A stretch of DNA of 64,000 nt from assembly GCA_001643675.2 (NCBI GenBank), contig LSRY02000048.1:434001-498000 (forward strand). Direction: 5' to 3'. Positions 15,001 through 58,500 of this stretch are shown piece by piece (within the stretch, counting starts at the first letter, position 1; the number at the start of each line of letters is the position of its first letter). A program made the translations under genes and the position numbers. The stretch is from Monocercomonoides exilis PA203. Its lineage: Eukaryota; Protista; Preaxostyla. The notes under the pieces were generated by a model that did not search any database, was not told the DNA's origin, and was given only the letters and a program-made list of their open reading frames with translations.

Positions 15001-15822
15001 TGCTCTGTTAAGACAAGTCCATAATGATCAATGAGCGAGTGGAGTGAATTGCTTTTTTGTTCTCGTAGATCAGTCCCTTCTCCAATTCCTTTCTTTTCAA
15101 AAAATTCATCCTCATCATTCTCATTTGATTGGTTTATCACCCCATCGTACAACGGAAAATCTGTTTCCAAATTCTCGCTTAGAAGTGAGCATACAAAGTT
15201 TAATACATTTTCGTGAATTGACTTTTGAGCGGATGTTACGTTTGAAGATAGAATTGTTTCTGAAAAGCAAATAAGTTTAAATCAAAAAAAAGATCTATTC
15301 CAAACTGTATGTTCCTAGAAGGTAAGGTATTAATGCACGAAATACTATTGGTACAGAGAGCACAGGTGGAACACCAGAAATTTGCAATATAATCAATTTT
15401 AGGGTTGACAGAGCGTGGCCAACCAATGGAGCAATACACAAACAATTCGCTAAAATTTGATACAATTTTATTGCAGAATTAATGTATGCATAAAAAAATT
15501 TAAAGAATTACAAACTTATTGAATTTACCGTAAATTGAAGAAGTTCAGGTCGTTTTTTTAAATATTGTTGGGATATCAATCTAGAAGCAACGTTCAAACT
15601 ATCAATTGCTTCATTAAATGGTCCAACAGCTTGTTCACTCAACACTAAGTATTATGATTCAAAAAATGAAACCACATTATTCATTTCTAAAAAGTCAAAA
15701 AATAAACCTGACAAATTTTTCATTGCTTTCATCATTGTTTCCTGATTGTCTGTTTGCATGGGTAAATCTCTTTCTTGCGTCAAATCGATTGGTTCTGGAA
15801 ATGTACCGATATTTTGGCTCAT
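9087..15822 (-). CDS. NCAPD3: Condensin II complex subunit D3 (CAP-D3, HEAT/Cnd1 domain); exons 15822-15708, 15644-15516, 15449-15306, 15259-9087 (~2186 aa)
   Basis: Cnd1-type block RAQACLALGKMC...RNNAVIVVGQL...LMKEDIIRMRG...LADPSPTIREFA...KNPSL...FN. D3-type downstream motifs GPLNAERRYVVYASLLNQMSDKEKF and KKHIAQNVIPVL...DRTLAAEVKYEI. Three upstream exons join in frame through canonical introns. Confidence 0.88.
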
Positions 15823-16042: not shown

Positions 16043-19000
16043 GAATGTTCTTGAGAAGACAAAGCTAACACCACTGGAAAAGGAAGAGTTAGAAGAACGG
16101 AAAAAGCAGTTAGAAGACGGATGGAATAATGACACTCATGTGGATCCTTTGCCAAAAATTGAATCGATTTTTTCACCAACTAAAGAAGAACTTATCAAAA
16201 AGAAAAAGAAAAAGAAAAAGAGCCTTTTAAAATATCCACTTGAAATACCAGAAGAATTCTCTCAAATTCGATCTCATAAAAGATCGCTACATGAAGGGAG
16301 TATTTCAGAAGAGCCATCTTATCAAGAAGGAATTGCATCAGAGAAGAAATATAAAGAAGGAAAAATAGGAAGGACGCCAAGAGTTCTTTCCTCGCGGAAA
16401 ACCGAAAAAGATGATGCTAAAACACATAAGATAGCAAGACATTCTCCCACTAGAGTTGAGCGTCAAGCTTGGGACGATGAACATTTTAAAAAGCCAATAT
16501 CCGATAGAAGCCAATTACGCGATGAGCATACATTGAAAAAGAAGAAGAAGAAGAAAGTTGTATCAAATACAACAGGAAGCAGTCAAACAGCACGCACAGC
16601 TTCAGGAAAAGCTGATTCCAAGAGGGATATTCATGTATCTCCTAGACCTTCTTCAGACCGAATCAGAATGCGACATTCACCTTCTCCTCGGAGAAATGAC
16701 GCTTTAAACGAAAAGAAAATGAAGAAAACCAAACAGATTCGAGTTTCGCCTGAAAAGAAAATGAAGGAAAGATCGCCAGAGCGAATCAACAGTTCAAGAG
16801 AAACTTCAATGAAAAAACCGAAAAGCAAGGTGAGTCCTGAAAAGAGGAAGAGAGCTAAATCACCTGAGGGCAAAGCAGAGAGAGAAACAGAAAGAAAAGA
16901 GCGATTGCAGCACAAACACAAAAGGAAGAGCGATTTGAGTGATTCAGAAAGCGATGGAGAAGAAAAGAAACAGAAGAAAGAGAAGAGAAAAAAGAAAGAA
17001 AAAAGCGAAAAAGAAAGTGAAATGCAAAATTCTGAGCAACCACACAAGAAATCGCAGAAAAAGCCGCCTGAAGAACCGCCTTCCATCGAGCAGCTTGTGA
17101 TCACTGTTGAAGATTCCATTCAGCTTTCGCCTGAATTCATCAAGCTTCTGATGTCACTGCATAAGTCAGGGCAGTTGAAATCACCTGTTCACATTGAGAA
17201 AGCAAACACTTTGCCAAAGCAAGATGCTAAGAAAGGAACGAAAGGAACACAAAAAGGAGATGATGGAATGCTTCACTCAGAGCAAAATCATAACAAAATA
17301 CTGCCTTCTTCATATTTATCTTCTTCTTCTTCTTCTTCTTCTTTCCCTTCATCATCATCATCTTCTTCTTCTTCTTCACATCAACCAGATTCCAAGCCAA
17401 CTCTTTCGCAGCCCAACAGCATCACCTCCCATTCAATCCCTCGTATCACACCACAAGAGCCTCTCACAACACTCACGCCAATCATCATACACAGTGGAAG
17501 CAGCAGAGGAAGAAGTGAAAGAAATGAGAGAGAAAGATTAGAAAACAAAGAAAGAGGAGAAAGAGGAGAAAGAAGAGAAAGAGAAAATGATAATGTTCAG
17601 CCCTGGTCTGCTTTGACACAGCGCTCAGCTGCTGTTGTTGGGAGCGATGATCGTTCGAATTCTTCTCGTTTTGCACCTTCTTCTTCTTCTTCTTCTACCT
17701 CTTCTTCTTATCCTTTTTCCTCTTATCCTTCATCTCTTTCTTCTCCTCTTTCTTCCCATCTTTCTTCATTGACATCTTCACACCAGCGCCTCACCACACC
17801 TGCTGCTCATCTTCCGCTGCAGTCTGCTCAACAAAGATTTCACCAAGACACATTTCAAGCACGTTCTCAGTTTACTTCTTCTTCTTCTTCTTTTCCTTCA
17901 TCATCATCTTCTTCCTCCTTTTTGCCATCATCATCATCTTCTTCTTCTTCTTCTACTGCTGCTGCTGCTTATGATCGGCAAATCGAACCTTCTTATCTTC
18001 CTTCTTCTCGTTCATCAGAGTTGCCAATTTCGTATCCTGCTTCATTGCCAGCTCAATCTTATTCAGAAGATGTTTCAATGGAGCAATTGAATAACAGGCA
18101 AAGATATGGTCATCATCAACAACAGCAAATGCAACAGCAAATGCAAAGAAGGCAGCCATCCCTTCAAAACTATTCGTATCCTGCTGATCCTTACACTTCA
18201 TCCTCTTCATCCTCCTCCTCCTCCTCTTCTTCTTCTTCTTCTTCTTCTTTTCCTTCTTCTTCCCTTTCAGACGGACCAAACTCATTTATCCAGCCAACTT
18301 ATGTTCCAATCAGCACATCACGCACAACTTCCACAGCTTTCCCTTCTTCTTCTTCCTCCTCCTCATCTTCTTCTTTTGCTCCTCAAACTCTTCACAACTA
18401 TTCTTCTGCTCCTTCTTCTTCTTTTCCCTCTTCTTCTTTTCCCTATTCTTCTTCTTCTTCTTCATCTTCATCTTCTTTTGCTCCTTCCTTTGCCGTCTTT
18501 CCAGCAGATCCGCCATTTGCCCCTGGAATCATCCCTCCTCCACAGCCAGTTGCTTTATATCCACCTCACAACACTTCATTCCATTCAAATGCTTCTTCTT
18601 CTTCTTCTTCTTCTAATTCTTCCTCTTCCTCTTCTTCCTCCTCTTCTCCTTCGAATTCTTCTTCTTCTTCTTCTTCATTTCCTCAAAGTTCTCATAATGT
18701 TTCACAACGTTCATTTCTTCCTCCTCCGCCTCCGCCTTTCACTTCGCCAAGCTTCAAATTCGCTCCTCCATTTCAATCTTATTTGCATTCGCCTTCTTCT
18801 TCTTCCTCTTCCTCTTCCTCTTCCTCCTCCTCCTCCTCTTCCCCTTCTTCTGTTCCATATCAACATCAACGTCCTTCAAACAACAATCAGAATCAACTGC
18901 ATAACAAACAATATACTTATCCTCTCCAATCTCCTTATTCATCATCATCATCATCTTCTTCTTCTCCTTCTTCTTCTTCTTCCTCTTCCTCTTCTTCCTC

Positions 19001-22000
19001 TTTTCCTTCTTCTTCTTCTTCTTCTTCTTCTTCTCCTTCCTCAAAACATTCCTCTTTCCTTGCTTCTCCACCAAATGCGTCTTCTTCTTTGCTTTTGTCT
19101 TCAAATCGTCTGAATTCAGATGGAGAACTTTCGTTTACTGCTGCATTGCCAAAGACAGAAGAAGAAGAAGAAGAAGAAGAAGGAGAAGGAGAAGGAGAAG
19201 GAGAAGGAGAATGGGAAGAAGAAGAAGAAGAAGAAGAAATGGAAGAGGAAGGAGAATGGGAAGAAGAGGAGGAGGAGGAGGAAAAAGAAGAGGAAAAAGA
19301 AGAGGAAAAAGAAGAGGAAATGGAAGAAGAAGAAGAAGAAAGAAATGGTTTGTGGACTCCAAAAGAAGGAAGTGAAGGAGAAGAGGAAGAAGAGGAAGAA
19401 GAAGAAGAAAAAGAAAAAGGGAAAAAGAAGGAAAAGAAGAAGAAAATGAAAAGAAACATTGAAGATTCAGGCAAAAAACAAAAAGAAAAGAAAAAGGAAG
19501 AGAAGAAAAAGGAAGAAGAGGAAGAGGAAGAAGAGGAAGAAAATGAAGATGAAGAAGAGTGGGAATGGGAAGAAGTTGAAGAGGAAGAAATCAAACAAGA
19601 AGAAGAGGAAGAAAGAGAAGGAGAAGAAGAATCTGAAGAATCTGAAGGAGGAGGAGGAGAAGAAGAAGTTGAGAGACACAAAAATATGATACCTCCTCCT
19701 CAGCACACAATGTCGCTACCAGCATTGATGCCATTCAGTGAAGCAGAGAAAATGAAGAAGAAGGAGAAGAAGGGGAAGAAGGGGAAGAAAGATGAATATA
19801 AAGATGGAAAAGAAGAAGAAGAAGAAGAAGAAGATGATGATGATGACAGAGGAGATGAAAAGAATGAAGATAAATCGAAAGAATCGAAGAAGAAGAAGAA
19901 GGAGAAATCAAAACAGAAAGAAACAGAAAAAAAGCCACAAAAATCGAAAAGTTCCAATGAAAAAGGAAAAATCAATAATTCTTCCTCTTCTTCTTCCTCC
20001 TCCTCTTCCTCTCCTTCTTCCTCACCTTCCTTCACATCATCTTCTCCTTCTTCACCTTCCTTTTCCTCTTCTTCTTCTTCTCTTTCCCCATTCAACCAAC
20101 AACGTCTGTCAAAAACTTACTCTGCTTCTTCTTCCTCTTCCTCTTCCTCTTCTTCCTCTTCTTCCTCTTTTTCTCCTCTTTTCAAAGATTCTCCACTTGA
20201 AACACCGCAATTTCATAACAAAAATACAAAAAATTTGAAGTTTGTTTCGAAAACGCAGCAACCAAAAAGGAGAGAAAGAGAAAAAGGAAAGGAAAAGGAA
20301 GAAAATGAGAAAAAGAAGGGGAATGAAAAAGAAGAAGAAGAAGAAGAAGATGATGATGATGATGATGATGAAAAAGAAGAAGAAAAATTTGTGGAAGAAG
20401 AGGAAGAAGAAGAAGATGATGATGATGAATTTTCTGTTGTTTTGTCAGAGAAGAAAAAAAAGATGCAAAAGGAAGCATTGAAAGAAGCAAAGAAAGTGGT
20501 GAAGGATGTGATTGATAAACAGAAAGGAGGAAAGGAAGGAAAAGAAGAGGAGGAGGAAGAAGAAGAGGAAGAGGAAGAAAAGGGAGAAGAAGGGGAAGAA
20601 GAAAAGGAAGGAAAGGAAGAAGAGGGAGAGAAAGAAGAAAAGGAAGAAGGAAATAGTTGGGAAACAGAGAATGAAGATGGAATGGAATATGAAGAAGAAG
20701 AGGAAGAGGAAGAAGAAGAGGAGGAAGAGAAATGCATTGATGAAGATGATGAAAACTTCGAAGAAAATAGAAAAGGAAAAGAAGAAGAAGAAGAAAGCAG
20801 TGTAAATGAATCGAGTAATACTCCAGTCAGTTTTTCATCATCATCATCATCATCAGCTGTTCCATCAGCAGAAAGAGGAAGTCGTTCAAATCGGTTCAAT
20901 AAAAGTGTTTTGGAAACACCTTCGCCAAAAATGGCAGAGGAAGAAAGGAAGAAAGAGAAGGAGAGGGAGAAGGAGAGAGAAAGAGAAAGAGAAAGAGAAA
21001 GAGAAAGAGAAAGAGAAAGAGAAAGAGAAAGAGAAAGAGAAAGAGAAAGAGAAAGAGAAAGGGAAAGAGAAAGGGAGAAAAAGAAAGAGGAGAAGGAGAA
21101 GGAGAGGGAGAAGGAGAAGGAGAAAAAGAGGAAAGAGAAGAAAAACAAAGGAAGAAAGTTTGAAGATATTTTGATAGATTTTCATGATGATGATGATGAT
21201 GATGACAATGAAAAAGATGATAAAAGTTTTGACACAAAAAAGAATGAAAAACGCAAACCAGAAAGAAGAAATAACAGAGAAAACGATCAAAACAATGAAA
21301 TTTCTTCATTTCCTCAAAATTTTAAAGAAGAAATGGAACAAAATGAAGAAAATTTGAATGAAAAGAAAGAGATATGTGAAGATTCAATGAAAATGGGTGA
21401 GAAAGAAGATGAAAGAAGACAGAGAAATAAAGAGAATGACGTGAAAAAGAAGGAATTTGGTGAAAATGAAAAAGAAGAGGAAGAAAGAGAAAGAGGAAGA
21501 GGAAGAGAAAGAGAAAGAGAAGAAGAAAAAGAGCAAAATGAAACAAAAATTGCAAAAGAATCATCGAATATTCAAACCTCTGCTCCTCTTTCTTCTTCTC
21601 CTTCCTCCTCTTCCCCTTCTTCCCCTTCCCCTTCTTCCCCTTCTTCTTTCCCCTCTTCTTCTTCTTCTTCTTCTAATTCCAGCCTCACTCCAGATCAATA
21701 CCACCAACTGTACAGCACCACCCTTCACCCAAATTCCTGGCTTGCTCAACAAACAAACATAGAGCAAAATTCATCTTCTTCTTTTCCTTCCTCTTCTTCT
21801 CCTCTTTCTTCTTCTTCTTCTTCCTCTTCTTCTTCTCCTTCTTCTCTTCTTCTTCATCCAGTCGAAGATTCTCTTCTTTCTCCTCACTCTGAACATCTTC
21901 CATTTCTCTTGTCTTCACATTCACCATCTGGATTGCCTTTGCCTTTGTTGTTTGCTTCTCCAACAACTTCTTCTTCTGCTCCTTCTTCTTCCTCTTCTTC

Positions 22001-25000
22001 TTCTTCCTCTTCTTCTTCTTCCTCCTCAGCTTCTTTTTCTTCTACTACTACTGAGAAGATAGATGCATCTGATGCAAGCAAAGATGATTTTATTTCATCA
22101 CCTTTGAGCCAAAAAACTGTAACTCCACGACAAAATAATGGAATGGCGGACAAATTAAACAAGTCAGAAGGGAAAGAAGAGAAAGAAGAGGAAGAAGAGG
22201 AAGAAGAGAAAGACAAAAAAAACGAATCATTTAGTGACTCAAACTCGTCATTCACTGAAACAGACGAAGAAACCAGCATTCTTTCTTTTTCTCCTCGTTC
22301 TGTGAAGAAAAAGCAGTGGAAGCAGTTCAATGTGTCTTTAACACCCACGCGCTTTTCGTTTCCTATCACTCCACTCTCAGTCAAAACTGGCTATGTTTCA
22401 AAGGATTTGCTGGCTACACCTCAGCATTCGTTTGCTAATGCTTTTTATTCTTCTGCTTCTTCTTCTCTTTCTCCCTTTTCGTTTTCTTCTTCTTCTCCTT
22501 CTCCTTCTTATTCATCATCATCATCTTCTTCTTCTTCTTCCACCTCTTCTCCATTTCCCTCTCTCCACCCATCACACAACATCTCCTTCCTTCCTGTCAC
22601 ACATTTTTCTCCTTCTTTTCTTCATTCAAAGACATCTAAGCTTCATTTCCCCTCTTCTTTGAACAGTTCTTCATTGATCAGCACTCCACTGACTGACAGA
22701 GCTATGCCTGTCAAGTACAATGTGACACCACAAGAGACTCCTGTGAAGAAAGGAGGAAGAGGAGAAGAAGGAGAAGGGAGGGAAGAAGAAGGAATGAAAG
22801 AAGGAGGAGGAAGAGAAAAAGGAAGAAGAAAAGAAGTGAATCAAAAAGGAAACAAACAGAATATTAAGCAGAGCATCAAGCAAAGCCAAGCAGAAACACA
22901 TGGCTTTTTAGAGGAGATGAGAAACAAAGAAAATGAAGCGAGGCAAAAGACCGTGTATGCGTTGTTCAAAGAATGGAAGAGGCAGCAAAAGAGAGCAGAG
23001 GAGAGAATAAAGGAATTGAAAGAGGAGCATCAGAAGGAATGGACGAGATGGGAAGAAAGAAAAGAGAAAAGAAAAGAGGAAAAGAGGAAAAACAATGAAA
23101 ATGGGGAGAATGTGGAGAATGAAGCGAATTCAGCGAGAAAAAGGAAGAAATCCGAAGAAAAAGAAGACAAATTGTTCAAAAATGAGGTTGTTCGGCGGTG
23201 CAGAAAGATCAAAAAAGAAGCAAAAGAGCTGAAATTTGCTCTGAAGCAGACGCAGAAGGTGTTGGAGGATGAGGTTAGGAAAGTGCATTCATTGTCACTG
23301 CAGCGAATAAAACTGATAAACGAGCAAGAAATGATGATGAGGCAGCTCAGCAGCATAAGAGCGACTGAAGCACGAAATGACGAGAAGGAGAAATTTGATG
23401 AGAACGAGAGGAGGAAGAGAGAGAGGGAAGATTATGTTTCATTCAGCAAAAAATTGGATGAAGCAGCAGAGGAAAAGAAAAAGAAAGGGAAAAAAGAGAA
23501 AAACACATTAACAGCCCAAACAACCACACAAACAACACCAATAAGATCAGCTTCTGTGTCAACTGCGACTTCTCCAGTGCAGAGGAATGCTGTTATTTCG
23601 ACTGCTACATCACCTCTTATTGCTCGCTCTTCTTCCTCTTCGCCTTCTTCGCCTTCTTCCTCTTCCTCTTCTCCTTCTTCATTCACTTCTTCTTCTTCAT
23701 TCTTCCCCTCTTCTCATTCTTCTCCCCCAGTCTCAATAGAAACCCAAACCTCTCCTTTCTTCCGATTCGATGATGTCACTCCCACACACACCCATTCAGC
23801 CACAAATTCTGGTTTTCCCGTTTCAAATCTGAAAATTTCTCCTCCTTCGCCTTCTTCTCTTCCGCTCACACCCACAAAGAGATCGAATATTTACGATTTT
23901 GCTGCTTCATTGGTTTCTCCTCTTTCTTCTGCTTCTTCTGCTTCTGCTTCTTCTGCTTCTTCTTCTTCTTCTGCTGCTGCTCTTTCTGTGCAACAGGCAG
24001 AGGTGTCGTGTGCAGTGAATGAAGGAGAAGCTGCTGATGAAGAAAGAATGGGAACAATGGAAAGAGAAAGAGTAAGAGAAAGTGAAAGAATAAATGAGAA
24101 GAAGCCATTTACTCAAATGTCTTCTTCTTCTTCTTCTTCTTCTTCTTCTTCTTCTTCTTCTTCTTCTTCTTCTTCTTCTTCTTCTTCTTCTTCTTCTTCT
24201 TCTTCTTCTTCTTCTTCTTCTTCTTCTTCTTCTTCTTCTTCTTCTTCTTCTTCTTCTTCTTCTTCTTCTTCTCCCAAATCACCATCTTCCCCACTCAACA
24301 CTTCAAATTCTTCAATCAATTCATTCGCTTCACCAACTTCGCAGGCTTCACCCACTTCATCTTCTCTTTCTCCTATTCATTCAAATTCACTGAAATCTCC
24401 TTCTTCTTCTTACTCTTCTCCTTCACATTCACTTTCTTCTTCTCCTTTATCAACAACATCATCATCAATATCATCATCATCTTCTTCTTCTTCTTCTTCC
24501 AAATCTCTTCGCCCTCTTGTTCCTCCTCTAACCATCACAGGCCTCTCTCACCACATCCCCCGTATTCCTGATCTTTCTGATGATTCTCCTCTTTCTCCTT
24601 CTCTTTCTCCTTCTTCTCCTCTTTCTTCTTCTCCTTCCTCACTTTCTCCACCTTCATATCGAAGACGTCGTGATGATATGGAGAAAATGGAATTTTCTGA
24701 AGAAAGGAAAGAAAGAGAACAAGAAAGAGAAGAGGAAACAGAAAAAGGCAAAGACAAAGCAGAAAAATCAGAAAAAGAAAAAGAAAAAGCAGAAAAAGCC
24801 GAAGATGAATCAGAAGAAAGTGTGAAGCTGCCATTAGCAGACACTCCATCTGATGTGGATCTTGTGGTGTTGAATGTGATTGATCAAGAAGCGCAGTCAA
24901 TGTTATCACCCAGAGTGTCTCTGTTTAAGCAGTGTGAAGCATATATCAAGGAAGTGGAGCAAGACAGAGAGAAAGGAGAAGAGGAGGAAGAGGAGGAAGA

Positions 25001-26873
25001 GGAAGAGGAGGAAGAAGAAGAAGGAAAAGAGGAAGGAAAAGGGGAAGAAAAAGAAGAAATGGAGGTTAAGACGGAAGAAGAAAAAGCTGAAAACAAAATT
25101 GTTTCAGAATATTTGAATGACAACAAAGAAAACAACATGATTGAAAAGAAAGCAAAGAAGAGCAAGAGAAGGTCTTTATCAGGTGCTGAATCAAACACAC
25201 TGGCAAAAGCAAAAGTTTTAAAGACAGTTCAAGAGCAACTGCCTGATTACACAAAAGTATTTGTGTCTTTTCTTCAGTCAGCGCAGTTCACATCGATGGT
25301 GATTGATGCGATTTGGATTGCACATTCGTTTGATGCGCTGCAGAATCCGGGTATTTTGGAGACGGATGAGACGGATGATGAAGAAGATGACTTCAATTAT
25401 AATAACGATAATAACTGTGATAATAAGAACAACAACAATAATAATAATAATGTTGACAATAATAATCGTTTTTCTGCTTTGAAAAGAGGAGAAAACACAC
25501 AGAGCAATGCAACATCTCCGTTTTATCTTCCTCTTCCGTTCCAGTTCCGCAATGAAATCCTTCCGCAGATGCATCTGATTGTGCGGGAGATGCTCTTTGA
25601 GATACTTGACGGGCAAAGCGCCATCGAAAACAGCACATTCTCTACAGACAATGGGCAGCAGTCATCAGAAGGAGGAGGAAGAGATGGAGAAGATGGAGGA
25701 GAAGGAGCAAACAATAGAAGCTCTGCGCCTTTCTCTGCGAAGACGCTGGAAGAACTGCGGAAGGATCTGTTTGCAACACCTGTGCTGCCCACACAGCCAC
25801 CCACATTCACACAGCTACTCAGCCAGCAGCAGATGCTCCTTGTCTTCCACAACTTGAATGAGCTGCTGACAACACGAAGAGCCGATGCACAAAAGGCGAG
25901 CAAAGTTGGTGAAGCACTTGCAGCAAACTCTTCCTCTCCACAACACAGAATAACACTCTCAACCGCACTGGCTTCGGAAGATGCGCTGGACTCGCTGAGG
26001 GATCTGGTGGAGCTGGATCCGACTTCTGAATGTCGTGTTCTGCCTCCGCAGCTGCGTGACTTCTTTGCGAAGGAGCTGGAGGCTTTGGCTCCGCTGCAGC
26101 ACTGTTTGCCAAGGAATTACTGCGAAGTGAAGAAGCTGATGGCGAATGTGCCGCAGCACAAGATGGAAATGGCAGAGTGGCTGTGTGTGGAGAAGAATCG
26201 GAGTGCTGTGAGTGGAGTGGAAACTCCCATGGAAGAAGAGCAGATCATGTCTTTGCTGCACATCAAGACCATTCCTCAATCGATTTTCTCTTTGAAACTG
26301 CCGGTTTTGAATGAGAACTGTGCTGAAGTGAGAAAGGAAGGATGTTTGGATTCTGAAAGAGCTGGTGAAGCAAATGTGGATATCAACAGCCAGCCTTCAT
26401 TTGCCTCTGCTTCAATGATGACTTATCCCATTTCTTCTGCTTCTGCTCGTTCTTCAACCCCTCTTTCTTCTCTTTCTTCTCCGCTTGCTGTGCTCTGCCA
26501 CTTCGAGACGACGTCAGCGGTGTCTGTGAAGCGGCATCTGGTTGCGCTTCTTGATGCGGAGATTGCAGAGCTGGACAGAGGAATGGAGGAAGCAATTCAG
26601 ATGCCTGAGGAGATCGATGAGTTTGTGGATGAGCTGTTTGTGGACGCATTTTCAGAGGTGCTGCATGTCGTGGGAAAGGAGAAAAATGAGGGCGAAGGCG
26701 ATGCAGTGATGGAAACGAATAAGAGAGGAGAAGAAGGGAGAGGAGAAGATGATAGAGAAGAAGATGATGATGAGACGGAGGATGAGGAAAATGAGAGAGA
26801 AGAGGAAGAAGAAGAGGAAGAGGAAGAAGAAGAGGAAGAAGACGAAAATGACGATGAACTTTCTTTGTATTGA
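16043..26873 (+). CDS. Giant low-complexity Ser/Glu/Lys-rich coiled-coil protein (~3600 aa); possibly CEP350-like; true start not resolved
   Basis: 10.8-kb uninterrupted frame, open upstream of the GTG at 16140 to a CAG acceptor ending at 16042. Coiled coil at ~22900-23500; higher-complexity helical C-terminus at ~25200-26680. Confidence 0.8.
20976..21061 (+). repeat. (AGAGAA)n coding microsatellite encoding Arg-Glu repeats
   Basis: Read directly, about 14 units. Confidence 0.9.
24120..24272 (+). repeat. Perfect (TCT)~51 coding microsatellite (poly-Ser)
   Basis: Read directly. Confidence 0.95.
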
Positions 26874-34913: not shown

Positions 34914-37257
34914 ATGTCAACGAACACGCAAAGAGTTAATATTTGCACTTTCAAGGAGGGGAACATTTCATTAAATCTGAATAATGATGATTGGATGAAG
35001 GGGGTTAAGCGAGGGCTTGCAGACAAATACGATGTTGATGCGCGTGATTTGTATTTCACTCAAAAGCAAAAGATAGTTTCTGACGATGCAAAAGTGCGAG
35101 ATGTTCTTGAAGTGTGGACCATTTCTTTTGTTTTCAACTTCTCTTTCTTGTCATTCTTTTCGTTATTTACAGAATAGTAGAGAAAGAATTTATTTTGTGA
35201 AGCGAAGATCTTCAGCTGGAGCGGCGGCCACAGCCACTGAAAATGAAGAGCCCTTGCCAAGAGTTGAAGAAAATCTTTCGCCCGAGCTGCGCAGCTCAAA
35301 GCCGTTTACTGTTAGCGTGACTGTTTGCAACAACGAAATGAAAGGGAAAGTGGTTTTGGTGGAAAATGTGAGGCCTGACGCAACGATTGACCAGCTTGCT
35401 ACTAGAATATTAGAGACCTCGAATATTCCTGTTGGAAGGATTTCAATTGTTTCAGAAATGGGTACAAAGTATTCAGGAACATGGAAAAGTGGGCGTCTCG
35501 AATGCCAGGAAATATCAGAAGAAAAATATGTATCTAAGCTAACGTATTGCGGGCAAAGTGGGTTGTCCTGCTGCATTTGTCAGTTGATTACAGCGAATTG
35601 TTTGCAAGAGCAGGCTTCTTCATCGACGCCTTCCTCATCCACTCCATCCTCTAACTCAAACCCATCAAATGTTGGATCAGAGGCTGCTGAGCAAAATGGA
35701 TCTCAAACGCTTACGCTGCAAATAGATTATGGCAAAGGAAATAAACTGTACATTGAAGCAGAAAAGGAGATGTTTGTGGAAGAGCTGAAGAAGATATTGG
35801 AACCGGAAGTGGGAATTTGTGCAGATAAGATGACGCTCGTTGGAGGAGGAACGATTATGGATAATGACAGGAATATTTCTTCATTCGGCCTTAAAGATGA
35901 AGATATGCTTTGTGCATATGAAAAAAACGAAGAAATGATTTTCATTTTCATCAAAAAACTTACAGGAAAAACTATTCCACTTTATGTTAATTCGAAGATG
36001 ACCATTGAAGAGTTGAAAGAAAGGATATTCGAATATGATAACACACCGCCAGATCAACAGCGGTTGATATTTGCTGGAAAGCAGTTGGAAAATGGTCGAA
36101 CTTTGAATGACTATGGAGTATATCGTGAATCAATTATTCATCTCACTTTGATGCTGCGTGGAGGGAAGAGCAATGACCTGTTTGTGATATCGCTCGGTGG
36201 GCAAACATTGAGATTTGGGATGGACGCAGCAGTGACAAGAGTGAGAGATGTGAAGCAGATGGTGGCTGAAAGAGAAGGGATTCCGGTAGAGCAGCAGAGA
36301 CTGGTGTGGGGGTTGAAAGAGCTGAGAGACGAGATGGAACTGGGTGAATATGGGATCGGGGACAAATGCACAGTGCATCTGGTGTTGAAGCTGAGGGGCG
36401 GGTTCAACCTGCAAGTGATGCATTTGGACGGGCGGGCAGTGAATGTGGAGGTGGATGGGGCAGAGTCAGTGGAGGATGTGAAGCGGAAGGTGACGGCAGT
36501 TGAAGGAGTGGATGTGAGCAAGATGCGGCTGGTATCGGCAGGAAGGTGGCTGAAAGACTGTCATGTGCTGGAAGATTTTGGGATTGGACCTGAATCAACA
36601 GTGCATCTGCTTCCAACAAGCAGAGGCGGGATGAGCGGACCAGCGCTTTCATTTGTGGATGTGACGAAGACTGATGCATTGGTGGAGAGTTCTTTCAGCA
36701 GCACAGCTCCACCTTGGCGTGTTGTGGAAAGTGGTATCAGCGTAGAAGGAATTTGCGAGAATGAGGGATGTCCTGCATTCAAGAAACAGGTAATTTGCCG
36801 ATGGAGAATGAAGACATTTGATTTGCATGGGAGCAAGCCGTTCTGCCCGTGCTGTCTAGAACAAATTGTGCCTCTGAAGCCGGGATTCTACGATTGCAGA
36901 TGGCGGATTTCATCGGTGAAAGAGGATGGGACAATGACTCACATGCCGTGGAAAGAGGCGGGGGATGAAAAATATACGACATACGACGAGAAGGAAGCCG
37001 GAACTGCAAAATTTCTTTTGCTGCAGATTGAGGCATTGCCCCGAGGGAGAGTTGTGAAGCATCCAACACTGCCATATGATGTGGCCGTGCCTAATTTGTG
37101 TGGAATTTGCCACAGAAGACAAGACGGATTCCCAATTCAAATATACAATTGTGGACACTCGTTCCATCGAAACTGCGGGAGTGACTGGGAAGAGACTGTT
37201 GGAGAGTGCCCAATTTGCCGGATGAAATTGAAGGATCAGCCAGCCCAATCTGCCTGA
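34914..37257 (+). CDS. Multi-ubiquitin-like-domain protein with Cys-rich domain and C-terminal RING-H2 (putative E3 ligase); exons 34914-35111, 35173-37257 (~760 aa)
   Basis: Ubl motifs IKKLTGKTI...[23 protein letters not shown]...[17 protein letters not shown]...LKLRGG and ...[10 protein letters not shown]...PTSRGG. RING-H2 CGIC-x13[10 protein letters not shown]10-CPIC. Intron 35112-35172 is GT-AG and joins in frame. Confidence 0.88.
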
Positions 37258-37703
37258 TTCGACAACTGAGAATAAATCATGAAAGATTCAAAATTTTAAT
37301 CAATTGATTTTTTTTTTCCTTTTACCTGGATGGAAAGCATTCAAACATTGTGGTTATTATTGTTATTTATTGAATGCTTGCTTTCTTTTGTTGATTTTAA
37401 TGTAATTTTATTTAATTTGGTTTTGTTAAAGTTCAGATTGATTTGTTTTGATTTGATTGAAAGAGAAAATGGTTGTTTCGCTTCTTTCTCTTTAAATAAT
37501 AGAGAAGGGTAAAGAAATAAATGATTTCTCGATAAATAAAATGCTTGTGATTTTATTTTTTATTTTATTTTTTTTTTTATTTTGGAAAGTTTTATTGGAT
37601 AATTTTCTGTTTTGTTTGATGTTGTGTTATTTTTATAAATCTATTGCGAATTTTTTATTAACATTTGATCGCTTGAAAAACTGATAAGAATGGAAGAGGA
37701 GCT

Positions 37704-37705
<2 letters not shown>

Positions 37706-37758
<53 letters not shown>
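37706..37758. repeat. Poly-T tract (~53 nt)
   Basis: Read directly. Confidence 0.95.
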
Positions 37759-38162
37759 AAGTGACTTATTTATTTCTTTTAAAACTTTATTTTTGTAAAA
37801 ATACTTTTTACGAAAATGTTTCGATTCCATTGAAAAATAAATTCTTTCTCCAAAAATTCTTTCCAAACATAAGCGATGAAAAGGGGAATGAGAATTATCA
37901 AACAAACAAATGAATGATCAGATAAATCGAAAAAACGATCAAAATAAAAGAAAATAAAAACATATATTCATATCGCTTTGTGGGTTATGAAAACAAAGAG
38001 AAAGAAGAAGATGATGATTGGGATAATTTGGATGCAGAGCATGTGACAGTGGAATACGACGCTGCAGCAACAGACGCCAAAGAGGAGAATGAAGTGAGCA
38101 ACATGCATCCAACAACAACTGGCCCAAATGAAGAAGACGCAAAGCAGCACCACAGCAACCAG

Positions 38163-38212
<50 letters not shown>
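38163..38212. repeat. (ATA)n microsatellite
   Basis: Read directly, about 16 units. Confidence 0.95.
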
Positions 38213-38499
38213 TGAAAGGAAAAGAAATGTTATTTTTTTTGAGTGTATGGCTGTTGTTTTGTTTATAAAAAATGCCAAAAACGTTTTGCGTGTTATCTTT
38301 TTCAATTCAATATTCCCTCTCTTTTCATTTTTCATCATCTCCGTTCATCTTTTCCCTTCTTTAACTTTATCAGTTTAATCTTTTCTCCCATCTCTCTTTT
38401 CTCTGCAAATTCTGTCCTTTTTTTGCATAAATCGTCTGTTTGTTATATTTCTTCTTTCTCAATTTCCTTTGTTTTCTTAGTCTCTTCACTTTTTCTACT

Positions 38500-52565: not shown

Positions 52566-55500
52566 TCAGCATGTGGAGTCTCCGCTGTCGTAGAAATACC
52601 CATTTGTGTCTTCAACATAATCAATTGCATCGGATGCTGTGACAATCATGACTCCTGGAGGGAAGCGCTGATATAGCTCCTTTTTCAAATTGAAGAGAGA
52701 TGGTCTGTCAGCGGGAAGCTGTGCCAGGCATTTCTTCGCCAGCTCTGCCAAGCAGGAATTCTCCATCCAATGCAAGTTTGGCCTTTCTCCATTCGCAATC
52801 TTCTGCCCAGCTGCCTCGGCATCATACTCCCCAAACGGAATTTTTAGAGTCAAGCACTCCCACAGTATCATCCCAACTGAGAATGCCACAGATTTCTTTG
52901 TTGCTCCCAACTTCGTGTTGATCAGCAGTTCAGGCGCCTTCCACCTCATGCATTCTTTTTTGAAAAGGCTCTCATCCTCAAAGGCAGACGAGGGCAGAGA
53001 GTCATCATCATCATCATCATTAGTTGCAGATGTCACAACAGTTGATGACGAGATGGAAGAAGAGTCAGAATCATCAGAAGAAAGGAGATCAGAGTGCATC
53101 ACAATGCAGATCACCATATGTTCTGAGAAAAGAACAACGTGAGGACTCAGATTGACCAATGACTGGAGTGGATTTTCCATTTCGTCAAGCGAGTGGAGTG
53201 CGAGATTAGCAACCCAGAACAGGATTTGGGCTGTTGTTTGTTCTCTCTCCTGCAAAGTCTCAATTGGCATTTCCTTCTTCTCATTCTTTCCATGCAACAA
53301 CATAAACAACGAATCCCTCAAATCCACAATCAGCTTCTCATGAGGAGATGAGCATGCCATTGCATCCACCAGATTCGACATCGACGAGGTGGTTGGACAC
53401 AAATCCTCCCCTCGAACAAATGTTGAATCTGAATCAGTTGTTGAAGTGGATGAAATGGAAGGTGATGGAGTCTGCTTTCTTATATCCTCTTCCTCAACCT
53501 TCTCCAATACCCATTCTGGAATCTTGTCCGAATCCTTTCCAAGAATGTATTCAGTCGATCCACTTTCAGACAGAAGGTGCTCTGATGACTCCGAGTGTTC
53601 CAAGCTCTTCTCATACACCCTCTTCTTGATCCTCTCCTCATTCTTCTTCTCAGCTTCTCTTTCCTCTCTCCTCCACTGCTCCTCAGGAGACATCTCCATC
53701 GTGACCATCTCAAATGCCTTCGGATCCTTCTTCACTGTGTCGTTCACAATCTCCTCCAGTTCTTCTGTTCGTCTCTTTGCCTTCCTCCACCGAACGACGA
53801 ACACAATAAGTCCGAGGAGGACGATAAAAAAGAGCAAGAGAAATACAATTATGATGATTAACGGAAAAGTCGAAATTGTGTTTGTTCCTTTGTTCGTCAA
53901 GCTTTCGTGTTCATTGAATGTTGATTTATTTTTGATGACGATAGATTCAGTCGATGAAAGACGGTCAAGGTTGCCGTACAGAATGGAAACGAATAAGTCG
54001 GTGTCACTTGGTGCTTCGTTGAAAACCGACAACGAGACGAACCCTTGAACCTCGCTTTCCGAAAGAAACCCTTTGTCAGAAAAGTGATGCTTTTGAACAT
54101 ATTCGACATTGCCTGCTTTTGAGGTTATCTGAAACGACAAATTGCAAGGCAGAAGAAGCGATCCGGTGAAAGAAAGTGTCAAATCGCTTTTCAATTCATT
54201 GGTTTTCACAGAATGCAGTCGTGGAATAAAGAATGGAGACGATCTTTCCTCTGCGATCCCAGAGACGTTGCATCCATTGTTCAGGATCCACATTGACGTA
54301 TTTGGAAGCAAGCCGTCTCCGCCTTTAAGACTGAGAATTGTCAGTGCCCCCGCATTGGAGCAAATGATGTTTCTTCGAGCAGATGGATACTGAGGGATGG
54401 ATGGATTGTTGTTGCAAAATCTTCCATCGGCCACAGAAACACTTCCACCAGAACAGGAAATCCCTCCAAACGGTGACTGCTCAACTGTTGTGTCATTTAC
54501 GATTGCCAAGCAATTGTCAAAGTGCACCAATGATCCATTCCAATTGCATATTTCAAGTTGACTGTTTCCATTTTGCGGGTCATAAGCATTTTCATCATTG
54601 ATGCTGCCTTGAAAAAGGCAGGACTCTACGATGAGCTTGTCGCAACATGAGAATGCAGACAAACTGCCAACTTCAGCAGCGTTTGAAGGGCAGCAGGAAA
54701 GAGTGCAATTAGACAGAGAGAGTTTGCATTCAGGTGCACAGCAATCAATGCATGAAGCAGGTGTCAACGAAGAGACGTTTGCGAAGGTGATATCTTTGAA
54801 AGAAAATGATTCCATTTTCGTCGATGACTCCATTGGAGATAAGTTAACAAGCTCGACGAATGACCCACCATTCATAATGCAGTTTGAAACCCCCAATTTT
54901 TCTATTGAACCGTTTGACTTCTTCACCAGCAACATGCTTTTGGAGGAACAGACAAAATCCAGCTCTAATCTGTGGATCATAATATTTCCATCTTCGCATT
55001 TGATCGTTCTCGGGCAATTCAAGTTTTGGATTTTCATTTCCTCCAAAATGAGTTCACAGTTTGTGGCAGAAACAAGAACTGGGGCGTTTGAACCGCTATC
55101 CGACTCGCTGCAGAATTCAGATGAAACAAGCGAAGCTCTTCCATCAACAACAGAAAATAATATTTCGTGGCTCGAGGGAAAAGTGAGGGGAAGGATAAAA
55201 CGCACACTTTCGATCGACGCTTCATTTTCTGCTGAAATCACGCACTGGCGAGTCATGCTGAGGGCAGAACGAAAAGTGATGTTTGCCTTCTCTCGTGAAA
55301 GAGATTTGATTTCCGTGTTTGTGATGTTGCATTCGTTGTCTATTTCGCCGAGGCCACCGATCAGAAGCCTTGCAGCGAAGTCAATCACAAGATGCTCCAG
55401 CCCGCGCCCAACAGTCAGACATGGTTGATCCACTTTCCCGCATTGCCGCCCATTTGATCCGTTTCTCTCTTGCAATGATGAAACAACGATGGTGCTTTGC

Positions 55501-58500
55501 TGGTAGACAGTCACATAATCCGTCAGATCAACCGGATTGTGATTTTGATTGTCGCATCCGAAGATTGCATCAAAACGATTGAACACATCTGGTCGAAGAT
55601 CCAGGAGAAATTGAGCTTCATTGATCTGGCTTTCGATGCTCCAGCACTCAACAAATATGTCTCTCCCTTTCCAAGCGCTGTTTCCTTTGAACTCGTCGTT
55701 CTTGAAAACAAAACCCAGAGATCCCTGCCCTTCGGTTTTCAAATATACACCTCCGCCTTTCCCATTTGAAAGAGAGCACTCACAATTTGTGATTCTGCTG
55801 TTGTTCACTTCAAATCGACCGCCAATTCCAAGCATGAACAGCATGGCTCCACCGTTTTCCGATGATTCGGATCTGCACATATCGAATGTCGAACCATTGA
55901 TCTGCATGGCTGATGGGGAGATTGAAGAACATTGCAGAATGCAAGCACCGTTCAAAGAAGAAGACACTTTTTGGAATGTTGAAGCACTGATCGTTATTGT
56001 TGGAACTTCATTTCTTTCTGGAAGATGGCCGTCAATGCGACGAATAAATCCTTTGTCTGTCACCATATTTGACAAAATGCATTTGCTCAGAACACATGGA
56101 CTGCCGCTCCAAATGGAAATCAATTCCAATTCGAAAGTCAACTGAAGAACTTCGAAGTTGGAAATGAGCAAAGGACCGCTTTGCATCTCAATGAAGATCA
56201 AGCTCTGGAAGCGGACAGAAACATCTGAGCTTAGTGAGCATCGTGCGAGGGACAGTTGCCCATTCTTGCTGCAAATAACAAATCCATCCACATCATCCAG
56301 TGTGACATCAAGGAAAATGTCGATTTGCAGGAATGACAGACTCCAAGAGTTTGAAAACAACCCATTTGCAAAATTATCCACTCCAGGCTTCTTCAGTACA
56401 AGTTTTGCCTTTGTTGGTTCATCTGACACACAATGAGTTGATGCAACTGAGTAGTTGGATAAATCAAACATATTTTGCACAAAAGAAGTGTTGTCAATGA
56501 ATATTTGTTTTTGGGCAGAACTTTGATTGATTTGGTTCATCCCCTTCCAAAATGTTGAGCAAGGGTCGTCCTCATTCCCACATCTCGTAACATCCATTCC
56601 TTTGCTGGAAATGAATATTGTGTTTGAAGAATACCCAATCAAAAAGCGGAACAGATCTGTGTTTTCATTCAGAGGATCGCTCCCAACAAATTCGTTTGGA
56701 TCATCAGCCAAAGAAGAGAAGTTGAAGTTGAAAGTGGTGCTTGTGACTGATCCATTCAATTCACGAGCTGCAATGAAAAGACTTTTTCCAAGATATGCAC
56801 TATTTCCTCGAAATATCACATTCTTGAAAGAAAAAGGTTGCGGTTCATTTGAAGATGAACAGTCTGCAAACAAGAAACCTCCTCTTCCATGTGTTTCTGA
56901 GCAACCACAATATTCTAATTCGCATTCTTGAAAAGACAACGAAAAATGTGTGGACACATAGCAAGCAACGACACCTCCTCTTGATCTGCCTGATGCTTTT
57001 CCTCCAGTGAAATTGCATTTATCAGCAGAAAAATCAGATCTGATAATTAATGGAACGTCTTTGAAGCTGCGAGGATCGAATGTGCACAGACTCAGATGAA
57101 CGAAACCTCCAGCGGAGCGAATGAGATAATACTGGCATGCACTGTCAAGAGAAGAAAGAGAAGAGAAGAATGAAAATGTGCAATTCTCGATTGTCAATCC
57201 TTTATCAGGAGAAGGAGCAGATTGGAGCAATCCAAGTTGTCCAGAAATGAAAGAAAGCGGAAGCGAAAAGCAGATCGATTCAAACGACAAAGCTTCATGG
57301 CTGCAAATAACATCATCCACCCTTCCATCAGATGAATTTGGATTGATTGTCAGAGAACATCCATTCAAAGGATCTGATGAAGCCACCTCAAATGATGACA
57401 AATCATATGAGTGGTCAACTGAAGCCCCATCGACAATGGTTATTTTCTTTTGCTGCTCGTCTGACAGGATGTTCTGAAACCCTCTTGCGAATGAGCAGCA
57501 GGGATATCTTTCACTTCCACAGCCGATCATGTCAAATCCTGCTGAAGAGATGATGATGCTTTGCGACTGAAACTGGATCAAGAACAAATACAGATCATGA
57601 TTTGAGTCCTTGAAGCAACTGCGGTCGCATCCCATCAAGTCGGCCGATCTCTGGCCATCGTCTGTCACCAATGATATCAAGAACTTGGATGGGCTGACAG
57701 AAGCATTCAAGTTGTCGCAAATCAGAAATAGGTCTTTGCCGCACTCTGCTGAGTTGCTTCTGAAAGTGATGTTTTCGAACAGGAAGTCGTTGTTTGCACC
57801 TTCGGGAAGAGAAAGGAAAACTCCGCCTCCTCTTCCAGTGCAATCAGCAATGCCACTGTTTGTGATGCTTGTATTTCCGAATCTCAGCATGCCTGCTGGG
57901 TGAAGACTGCATTTCGCGAAGCCTCCTTCTGCAGCCCTGGACTTGCAGCTGTCAAAAGCACAGTTGCCAGCCATTATCACGTTTGTGCAGCTTGCAACAT
58001 TCAATAAGGGCTTATTTGCTTCTGCGAATGACCAGTCTGAATTTTCAATATGAACCGAACCCTCTGAAACGGATATTATTCCACCGTCACCTGAAAATGA
58101 GAGATGAGCGATTTCTGTTTTTGTCAGTTGAATCACTCCTTTGTTTCCTCTGATGATGCACATATTCGTTGAAGTGTTTGTTCCAGATTCACCTCCGATA
58201 AGGCAGTCATCAACAAACAGACTCCCGCCTTGAATGGAAATCATTTGCCCGACAGAAGACTCCTGCGAAAGATTGAACCTCAAATATGAAAGCATCAGCG
58301 ATGCAGAATGGATCTCGGTTTTCAATGAAAAGCCCCCATTTGCGTCAATCGCGAATGAAGATCGACTTGTGGAAGAAATCCCACGAACTGTGAGCGACAA
58401 TCCATTTCTGTCCAGAACATCGTTTAAACTGCATGAGTCGAGAATATTGATGGCTGTTTGATCTGAACGCATTTTTCTGAAGCCAAACATCAGATCTCCG

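What the first reader, a model, noticed from the sequence alone, without database searches (positions are those of the whole stretch)
34914..37257. Self-contained ubiquitin-like polyprotein: divergent Ubls with cleavable RGG ends fused to a Zn-binding domain and RING-H2
Seen: up to six beta-grasp-like units. Three N-terminal ones are degenerate and lack GG. Three mutually divergent ones follow, ending LRGG (~36165), LRGG (~36403) and SRGG (36630). A Met begins right after the last GG, followed by a Cys-rich domain ([21 protein letters not shown]...FCPCC...CRWRI) and a RING-H2. Established: deubiquitinases cut ubiquitin precursors after LRGG, and RING-H2 domains are E3 ligases. Inference: processing would release novel conjugatable modifiers together with their own E3 in fixed stoichiometry, a candidate undescribed Ubl-conjugation (possibly defence) cassette. 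This is the strongest candidate for a new system in the window.
Basis: partly seen in the sequence, partly recalled or inferred. Interest (0 to 1): 0.8.

Follow-up and report, generated by a model that had tools for sequence, protein, structure and literature searches.

The report
Ubiquitin-like repeats fused to RING ligase
This two-exon gene of the protist Monocercomonoides exilis encodes ubiquitin-like domains, an undescribed cysteine-rich beta domain and a RING-H2 ligase; it belongs to a large, unstudied eukaryotic and giant-virus family whose most conserved feature is a ubiquitin-type Gly-Gly junction just before the ligase half.

Summary
The gene (34914-37257, one 61-nt intron) encodes the 760-aa M. 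exilis protein annotated "putative polyubiquitin". It has three degenerate Ubl units, three divergent Ubl units ending LRGG/LRGG/SRGG, a Cys-rich domain and a RING-H2.

It is not an isolated invention.
- The genome holds 11 intact copies.
- The Cys-rich domain matches 1157 protein clusters. Named sources include oxymonads, diatoms, Mucoromycota, rotifers and giant viruses.
- It has no Pfam model and no sequence relative among solved structures.

Across this family the Ubl next to the domain is only about 54% identical to ubiquitin. Yet G75 and G76 are its most conserved positions (95%), and Pro never follows them (0 of 113). This supports deubiquitinase cleavage at that one junction, as in Ub-eL40 or FUBI-eS30.

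The two inner GG sites are different.
- They are specific to Monocercomonoides.
- They drift to LPGG, LCGG and LMGG in paralogues.
- All three GG motifs are lost in one intact paralogue.

Release of three separate modifiers is therefore weakly supported. Conjugation and any defence role are untested. I rate it a new variant of a known kind, of moderate interest.

The parts
34914..35111 (+). Exon 1 (residues 1-66), the start of degenerate Ubl unit U1
   Evidence: Translation equals P0001 residues 1-66; ORF list
35112..35172 (+). Intron, 61 nt, GTGTGG...TTTACAG
   Evidence: Sequence read. Frames join exactly as in the database protein. No RNA evidence could be obtained.
35173..37257 (+). Exon 2 (residues 67-760 plus the stop codon)
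   Evidence: Translation equals P0001 residues 67-760; 100% identity
34932..35205 (+). U1, a possible degenerate beta-grasp unit (residues ~7-77, spans the intron), no GG
   Evidence: hhalign against the family Ubl profile: probability 19.6%, pairwise E 1.2e-3, collinear over 65 columns. Plausible only.
35302..35589 (+). U2, a degenerate Ubl-like unit with a C-terminal Cys-rich extension (residues ~110-205), no GG
   Evidence: hhalign probability 83.7%, E 8e-6, over the N-terminal half only
35707..35922 (+). U3, a Ubl domain without a C-terminal GG (residues 245-316)
   Evidence: hhalign probability 96.6%, E 6e-10; Pfam Ubiquitin_2
35935..36165 (+). U4, a Ubl unit ending MLRGG (residues 321-397), followed by Lys
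   Evidence: 46/74 identical to ubiquitin; Pfam ubiquitin best stretch. The tail drifts to LPGG, LCGG and QTGV in paralogues.
36166..36402 (+). U5, a Ubl unit ending KLRGG (residues 398-476), followed by Phe
   Evidence: 31/74 identical to ubiquitin. The tail is LMGG in L010 and KKGW in L011. omega is 0.16-0.28 in the four comparisons with closer paralogues and 0.52 against L011.
36403..36630 (+). U6, a Ubl unit ending TSRGG (residues 477-552), followed by Met
   Evidence: 28/72 identical to ubiquitin. SRGG is kept in all five long-form paralogues and is SRCGW in L011. This junction corresponds to the family-wide conserved GG.
36631..37098 (+). Cys-rich beta-rich domain ('bZn', residues 553-708), uncharacterised. 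Conserved pattern: FVDV..AP.WR..G..EG.C.N..C.A....CP.C....GF.NC.W....Y.TYDE
   Evidence: 1157 clusters at E<=1e-3. No Pfam match. No PDB sequence match. AF2 with a 126-sequence alignment: pLDDT 95.5, pTM 0.87. Invariant or near-invariant C594, C599, C624, C627, C641.
37099..37224 (+). RING-H2 finger (C709..C748, C3H2C3), with the conserved Trp738 and with Arg749 after the last Cys

Best explanation
The gene encodes a lineage-expanded member of a widespread, uncharacterised family with the architecture [degenerate Ubl domains]-[Ubl ending in a ubiquitin-type RGG tail]-[short Gly/Pro linker]-[Cys-rich beta domain]-[RING-H2].

Shown:
- The architecture.
- The family membership.
- The compact, confidently modelled bZn+RING module.
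- A complete RING-H2.
- Purifying selection on all parts.
- Family-wide constraint on the diGly junction.

Inferred:
- The protein is a precursor. Deubiquitinases cut after the GG that precedes the bZn domain (G552 here), as they cut Ub-eL40, Ub-eS31 and FUBI-eS30.
- Cutting yields a poly-Ubl N-terminal product with a free GG end, plus an equimolar bZn-RING E3. The E3 recruits an E2~Ub through its RING and probably binds substrate, or a Ubl, through the bZn domain.
- The two extra GG-ended units (U4, U5) are a Monocercomonoides elaboration. Their junctions may or may not be cut.
- Whether the released Ubl piece is then conjugated or is only a cleavable chaperone or regulatory pro-domain remains open.
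For: Identity of the gene: 100% match to the M. exilis protein.

Family size and spread:
- 11 intact paralogues.
- The bZn domain finds 1157 clusters, 379 of them at E<=1e-10.
- Named or taxon-labelled members: Streblomastix, Fragilaria, Seminavis; Mucoromycota and Rotifera clusters that superpose over 137-145 residues at rmsd 1.5-2.6; Barrevirus and Pandoravirus at Foldseek E about 3e-19.

The junction:
- About 150 of 171 listed proteins carry GG within a few residues before the domain, and about two thirds have a RING after it.
- The last Ubl ends in GG in 113 of 124 sequences. The tail is LRLRGG in 53.
- The Ubl body is only a median 54% identical to ubiquitin. Even so, G75 and G76 are 95% conserved, above the core positions K27 (90%), G47 (87%) and L50 (86%). 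K48 is 51% and K63 is 21%.
- Pro at P1' occurs in 0 of 113 sequences, against 12, 24 and 19 at P2'-P4'. Ub-Pro bonds resist DUBs (established knowledge).

Independence of the ligase half: some sequences begin directly at the domain, for example P0139 and P0206 and atlas clusters of 148-164 aa. These may be Ubl-free members, which would suggest the ligase half works without an attached Ubl; but several such entries (P0134, P0138, P0267) are visibly truncated models, so this is not established.

Model quality: AF2 models bZn+RING as one rigid unit with pLDDT 95.5.

Selection: omega is 0.1-0.5 in every region.
Against: - No experimental or RNA/proteomic evidence of cleavage.
- In this gene the U6 tail is atypical (LLPTSRGG: Pro71, Thr72, Ser73). 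Leu73 matters to many DUBs (established knowledge).
- Paralogue L011 keeps an open frame of more than 700 codons, the bZn domain and the RING. It has lost all three GG motifs and gained a 33-aa insert at the junction. Cleavage is therefore not obligatory for every copy.
- GG followed by Gly could partly reflect a need for a flexible linker.
- The function of the bZn domain is unknown.
Confidence: 0.55

Rival explanations
1. Unprocessed multi-Ubl RING E3. The Ubl units are integral domains, as in Parkin, UHRF1 or HOIL-1. They regulate the ligase in cis (autoinhibition, E2 backside or RING binding) or dock it to the proteasome or to UBD proteins. The RGG tails are inherited linkers.
For: - L011 is intact without any GG.
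- Inner junctions drift to LPGG, LCGG and LMGG.
- The U6 tail PTSRGG is a poor match to LRLRGG.
- In relatives with several Ubl units, inner units lack GG in 17 of 20 cases, so many Ubl units in the family are clearly integral.
- The closest solved RINGs (RNF165/Ark2C, RNF38) are known to bind ubiquitin non-covalently, shown by the titles of 7r70/7r71 and 4v3l.
Against: - Integral UBL domains do not normally keep LRLRGG.
- Here G75 and G76 are the best-conserved Ubl positions (95%), and Pro is excluded from P1' in a Pro-rich linker.
- Linker length varies from 0 to 19 residues, which argues against a fixed docked Ubl.
- Sequences that begin directly at the bZn domain exist, though some may be truncated gene models.
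Confidence: 0.3
2. U4, U5 and U6 are each released as separate new modifiers, activated by an E1, and conjugated by the co-translated bZn-RING E3. Together they form a self-contained (possibly defence) Ubl system.
For: - The three units sit head to tail with RGG ends and no spacer, as in polyubiquitin.
- U5 and U6 are under purifying selection: omega 0.10-0.49 against the four closer paralogues and 0.43-0.52 against L011.
- Family-wide, the E1 and DUB contact residues R42 (80%), R72 (74%) and L73 (83%) are better kept than K48 and K63.
Against: - Inner GG junctions occur essentially only in Monocercomonoides and are not conserved among its paralogues.
- U4, U5 and U6 have Met, Lys and Thr at position 72, where Uba1 needs Arg (established knowledge).
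- Released U5 and U6 would begin with Lys and Phe, which are N-degron residues.
- The 605-aa paralogues lack U5 and U6 entirely.
- U4 would stay attached to U1-U3 because no GG lies upstream of it.
- Nothing in the neighbouring genes (a condensin-like HEAT protein, giant ORFs, a kinase) points to defence.
Confidence: 0.12
3. An ordinary polyubiquitin gene that supplies the ubiquitin pool, as the database name says.
For: The name given by NCBI/UniProt and the Pfam ubiquitin hits.
Against: - M. exilis has separate true ubiquitin genes: three tri-Ub loci and two fusion genes, 92% identical to vertebrate Ub.
- U4 is 62% identical and U5 and U6 about 40%.
- The units differ from each other (20-30 identical residues out of about 74).
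- A 208-aa E3 module follows them.
Confidence: 0.01

Closest known systems
Ubiquitin/Ubl C-terminal extension precursors: Ub-eL40 (UBA52), Ub-eS31 (RPS27A), FUBI-eS30 (FAU)
   Same: An N-terminal Ub or divergent Ubl ends in GG and is fused in frame to a Cys-rich (inferred Zn-binding) protein. A GG junction that is never followed by Pro implies DUB processing into equimolar products. FUBI, like these Ubl units, is a divergent Ubl that keeps GG.
   Different: The extension is a 208-aa bZn+RING-H2 E3, not a ribosomal protein. The Ubl is not ubiquitin itself (median 54% identity). It is often preceded by extra non-cleavable Ubl domains. Cleavage has not been shown.
ISG15 and FAT10 (tandem-Ubl modifiers with a single C-terminal GG; ISG15 is made as a precursor)
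   Same: If cut only at the last GG, the released product would be several Ubl domains with one free GG end.
   Different: There are four to six units instead of two. The precursor extension is an E3. No dedicated E1 or E2 is known. Conjugation is untested.
Ubl-containing RING-type E3s (Parkin, UHRF1/2, HOIL-1)
   Same: Ubl domain(s) and a RING-type ligase sit in one polypeptide.
   Different: Those Ubl domains lack a conserved LRLRGG tail and are not cleaved. Their intervening domains are unrelated to the bZn domain.
Ubiquitin-'zinc ring finger' fusions catalogued in Bigelowiella natans and Guillardia theta (Mathur et al. 2019, PMC6332867), and database entries 'ring and ubiquitin domain containing protein' (Streblomastix, Barrevirus, Pandoravirus)
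   Same: Probably the same family: one or two Ub units followed by a RING. The viral entries and Streblomastix matched directly in structure or sequence.
   Different: These were only listed. There is no description of the middle domain, of the GG constraint or of function. I did not test the algal proteins themselves.

Membership tests
Ubiquitin family beta-grasp domain (PF00240) | Significant profile match over the ~72-residue fold | tested here: met
   E=5e-60 in 4 stretches (U3-U6). U3 hhalign probability 96.6%. U2 is partial and U1 weak.
Polyubiquitin gene (the database name) | Head-to-tail repeats of (near-)identical ubiquitin, each starting with Met and ending RLRGG, with only one or a few extra residues after the last unit | tested here: not met
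   The units are 37-62% identical to Ub and 27-40% to each other. They start with M, K and F. A 208-aa E3 module follows. True Ub genes lie elsewhere in the genome.
RING-H2 E3 ligase | C3H2C3 ligand pattern with canonical spacing | tested here: met
RING-H2 E3 ligase | E2-dependent ubiquitin transfer activity | not testable with these tools
   Needs an in vitro autoubiquitylation assay. The E2-contact Trp738 and Arg749 after the last Cys are present (read from the sequence).
Ub/Ubl C-terminal-extension precursors | A Ubl ending in GG joined directly to the extension, with P1' not Pro | tested here: met
   SRGG followed by M at 36630/36631. Family-wide: GG in 113 of 124 sequences and Pro at P1' in 0 of 113.
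Ub/Ubl C-terminal-extension precursors | Cleavage of the junction by deubiquitinases in vivo | not testable with these tools
   No proteomic or read data could be obtained.
Ubl-bZn-RING family (defined here) | bZn domain with conserved F, D, AP.WR, G, C-x4-C, CP.C, GF.NC.W and Y.TYDE, placed between a GG-ended Ubl and a RING-H2 | tested here: met
   The window protein carries every invariant and near-invariant column of alignments A2 and A3 and has the family domain order.
Conjugatable Ubl modifier (ubiquitin, NEDD8, ISG15 type) | Free C-terminal GG, E1 activation and isopeptide attachment to substrates | not testable with these tools
   Only the GG motif can be read. Position 72 is M, K and T in U4, U5 and U6, against Arg in ubiquitin.

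The most novel reading that the evidence does not exclude
The Ubl-bZn-RING family is a self-contained modifier-plus-ligase module. It is spread across eukaryotes and has been captured by giant viruses. DUB cleavage frees a divergent (poly-)Ubl that lacks the K48/K63 chain lysines. The co-translated bZn-RING E3 recognises its tail or body through the new bZn fold and attaches it to substrates. This would be a previously unrecognised Ubl conjugation pathway with built-in 1:1 stoichiometry.
Probability: 0.15. Interest if true: 0.8.

Novelty: new variant of a known kind. Interest (0 to 1): 0.55.

Why it matters
Ubiquitin-fusion precursors are classically known for two ribosomal proteins and a few oddities. 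This case is different: a family with more than a thousand sequence clusters in which a divergent Ubl with a strongly conserved, cleavable-looking diGly tail is fused to a RING E3 through a confidently folded domain. That domain has no Pfam model and no solved relative by sequence.

The family is missing from curated domain databases. Its members are mislabelled 'polyubiquitin' or 'ubiquitin'.

If the junction is cut, the family gives a natural system for asking two questions. Why would a ligase be made together with a Ubl? Can such Ubl units be conjugated? Its presence in Pandoravirus and a klosneuvirus hints at use in virus-host conflict.

For this window specifically, the result corrects the annotation. 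It also shows which of the three GG sites is likely to matter.

Tried and rejected
- Single-sequence AF2 of the C-terminal half gave pLDDT 37.6 and was unusable. It succeeded only with the 126-sequence alignment.
- A PDB profile search with the domain alone gave nothing below E 0.5.
- Pfam on 126 members found only RING families.
- An atlas feature search that excluded Ub and RING families gave no usable hit.
- The word-indexed profile search with A2 returned only 5 proteins.
- Literature searches for Ub-RING fusions found only the algal catalogue.
- The idea that the bZn domain is an autoprotease was considered and dropped, because it has no conserved His and only one Cys (C641) outside the two CxnC pairs (C594/C599 and C624/C627) that are presumed, not shown, to bind one Zn.
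- The spliced protein was never assembled by me. Searches used exon 2 by reference, or the identical database protein P0001.

Full report
WHAT IS THERE. The window is Monocercomonoides exilis DNA (G000:C45:434001-498000). The finding is a two-exon gene.
- Exon 1 is 34914-35111.
- A 61-nt GT..AG intron is 35112-35172.
- Exon 2 is 35173-37257.
Checked exon by exon, the two translations equal residues 1-66 and 67-760 of the database protein P0001, 'putative polyubiquitin'. Searches used exon 2 by reference or the identical database protein.

Pfam gives the ubiquitin family at E=5e-60 (4 stretches) and a C-terminal RING-H2. The layout in residues is:
- U1, about 7-77
- U2, about 110-205
- U3, 245-316
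- U4, 321-397, ending MLRGG
- U5, 398-476, ending KLRGG
- U6, 477-552, ending TSRGG
- a Cys-rich domain, 553-708
- RING-H2, 709-750

U3 is a clear Ubl (hhalign 96.6%), U2 is partial (83.7%) and U1 is only plausible (19.6%). U4, U5 and U6 share 46/74, 31/74 and 28/72 identical residues with ubiquitin, and only 20-30 of about 74 with each other.

IT IS NOT POLYUBIQUITIN. M. exilis has ordinary ubiquitin genes elsewhere. There are three tri-ubiquitin loci and two short fusion genes, all 92% identical to vertebrate ubiquitin. U4 of this gene is the next best match, at 62%.

PARALOGUES. The genome has 11 intact copies plus decayed fragments.
- Five are long forms like this one.
- Several 605-aa forms lack U5 and U6 exactly in register. 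In these, a canonical LVLRLRGG tail abuts the Cys-rich domain.
- The inner junctions are not stable. U4 ends LPGG in two copies and LCGG in L010. U5 ends LMGG in L010.
- The most divergent copy, L011 (51% identity), keeps an open frame of more than 700 codons, the Cys-rich domain and the RING. All three GG motifs are gone (QTGV, KKGW, SRCGW), and a 33-residue low-complexity insert separates U6 from the domain.
- All regions evolve under purifying selection (omega 0.1-0.5). U5, U6 and the Cys-rich domain are among the most constrained in most comparisons.

A LARGE UNDESCRIBED FAMILY. The Cys-rich domain alone (residues 553-708) was searched without a word index against 1.84 billion representatives. 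It found 1157 clusters at E<=1e-3 and 379 at E<=1e-10.

Of the 171 listed proteins, about 150 have GG within a few residues upstream of the domain. This is usually a ubiquitin-type ...LHLVLRLRGG tail followed by Gly. About two thirds have a RING after the domain by a strict pattern.

Named or taxon-labelled members:
- the oxymonad Streblomastix strix ('ring and ubiquitin domain containing protein') and the diatoms Fragilaria and Seminavis
- ESM-atlas clusters from Mucoromycota and Rotifera that superpose on the model over 137-145 residues at rmsd 1.5-2.6
- an Oomycota cluster and a Euglenozoa cluster, by features only, which are leads
- giant viruses: Barrevirus A0A3G4ZQ93 and Pandoravirus salinus S4W648, at Foldseek E about 3e-19 with 30% identity over about 210 columns

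The domain has no Pfam model and no sequence relative among solved structures.

With a 126-sequence alignment, AlphaFold2 models the domain plus RING as one compact, mostly beta unit (pLDDT 95.5, pTM 0.87). Structure searches with that model return only RING matches.

Five Cys are invariant or nearly so: C594-x4-C599, C624-P-x-C627 and C641. This is consistent with, but does not prove, a zinc site.

WHAT THE FAMILY SAYS ABOUT THE GG MOTIFS. In 124 representatives with a recognisable Ubl before the domain, that Ubl ends in GG in 113. The tail is LRLRGG in 53.

The Ubl body is not ubiquitin. Identity to ubiquitin has a median of 54% and a maximum of 86%. Yet G75 and G76 are the two most conserved positions of the whole Ubl, at 95% each. 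For comparison:
- K27 90%, G47 87%, L50 86%
- L73 83%, R42 80%, R72 and R74 74%
- K48 51%, K63 21%

The residue after GG is never Pro (0 of 113). Pro makes up 11-21% of the next three linker positions. Ub-Pro bonds are the one junction deubiquitinases cut poorly (established knowledge). Linker length from GG to the conserved Phe ranges from 0 to 19 residues. Some sequences begin directly at the domain, though several of these are visibly truncated gene models, so Ubl-free members are not established.

Together this argues that the junction before the Cys-rich domain is a processing site, as in Ub-eL40, Ub-eS31 and FUBI-eS30.

By contrast, in relatives with several Ubl units the inner units lack GG in 17 of 20 cases. 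The few inner GG motifs are almost all from Monocercomonoides. N-terminal regions of other members often hold further degenerate Ubl domains. So 'degenerate Ubl units + one GG-ended Ubl + domain + RING', which is the 605-aa form, looks like the general plan. U5 and U6 are a local addition.

MECHANISM, WITH ODDS.

Most likely (about 0.55): a precursor cut after G552 by cellular DUBs. This releases a poly-Ubl piece with a free GG and an equimolar bZn-RING E3.
- The RING is complete. It carries the usual E2-contact Trp738 and an Arg749 after the last Cys (read from the sequence). It most resembles the RNF165, RNF38 and AMFR RINGs.
- The bZn domain is presumably the recognition module.
- Caveats for this particular gene: the U6 tail (LLPTSRGG) departs from LRLRGG at positions 71-73, and L011 shows that a copy can persist without any GG.

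Rival 1 (about 0.3): no cleavage, with the Ubl units acting in cis.

The evidence against it:
- The inner GG sites drift among paralogues.
- Position 72 is Met, Lys and Thr in U4, U5 and U6.
- Released U5 and U6 would begin with Lys and Phe, which are N-degron residues.
- U4 could never be freed from U1-U3.

There is no evidence for a defence role. The neighbouring genes are a condensin-like HEAT protein, a 3577-aa ORF without domains and a giant kinase-domain protein.

KNOWN OR NEW. Ub-'zinc ring finger' fusions were listed without analysis in Bigelowiella and Guillardia (PMC6332867). Six literature searches found no description of the middle domain, of the GG constraint or of function. The library is incomplete, so prior work in subscription journals cannot be excluded.

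I rate it a new variant of a known kind: a Ub/Ubl C-terminal-extension precursor whose extension is a RING E3 with an uncurated domain. Interest is moderate. The window gene itself is one ordinary member of the family. The family-level pattern is the notable result.

LIMITS.
Splicing rests on the GT..AG intron and on identity to the deposited gene model.
It did not affect the reading.

Noticed in passing
window 36166-36630 (U5/U6), compared with L002, L006, L009, L010: Synonymous divergence between paralogues is 3-4 times lower in U6, and partly in U5, than in flanking regions. For example, L001 vs L009 gives dS 0.43 in U6 against 1.1-1.7 elsewhere. This suggests patchy gene conversion among the dispersed copies.
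   Followed up: partly
G000:C1:1992871-1994898 and C1:2078210-2080237; G000:C10:1705494-1707740: There are other poly-Ubl genes in the same genome. One is an inverted pair of 681-aa open frames with about 8 Ubl units (49-59% identical to ubiquitin). Another is a 951-aa frame with about 10 units. They are distinct from the true tri-ubiquitin loci at C11:1341030 and C36:404516/408147.
   Followed up: no
BFVD A0A3G4ZQ93 (Barrevirus), S4W648 (Pandoravirus salinus): Giant viruses encode full Ubl-bZn-RING homologues (Foldseek E about 3e-19, 30% identity over about 210 columns). This suggests capture from protist hosts.
   Followed up: no
ESM-atlas cluster, rotifer ART (PF01129) proteins of about 352 aa: A domain in rotifer arginine ADP-ribosyltransferase-family proteins superposes weakly on the bZn domain (TM 0.46 over 115 residues). 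It may mark a second architectural context for this fold.
   Followed up: no
L007 (G000:C17:526218-526835) and L008 (G000:C27:863261-863878); L012/L013 (C47:1651146-1651541): Two family copies carry a single in-frame stop (TAA, TAG). One locus is a heavily decayed fragment with five stops. The family is therefore turning over.
   Followed up: no
window 16140-26873 (+) and 52566-62333 (-): There are two giant open frames. One is 3577 aa with no Pfam match at all. The other is 3255 aa with only a C-terminal partial protein-kinase match. The frame at 9087-15170 (-) is a condensin Cnd1-like HEAT protein lying in the GC-rich (51%) stretch at 10-14 kb.
   Followed up: partly
window 37633-38378: Long homopolymeric coding-like runs (poly-Lys/AAG-rich and poly-Ile) lie just downstream of the gene, in the AT-rich intergenic region.
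   Followed up: no
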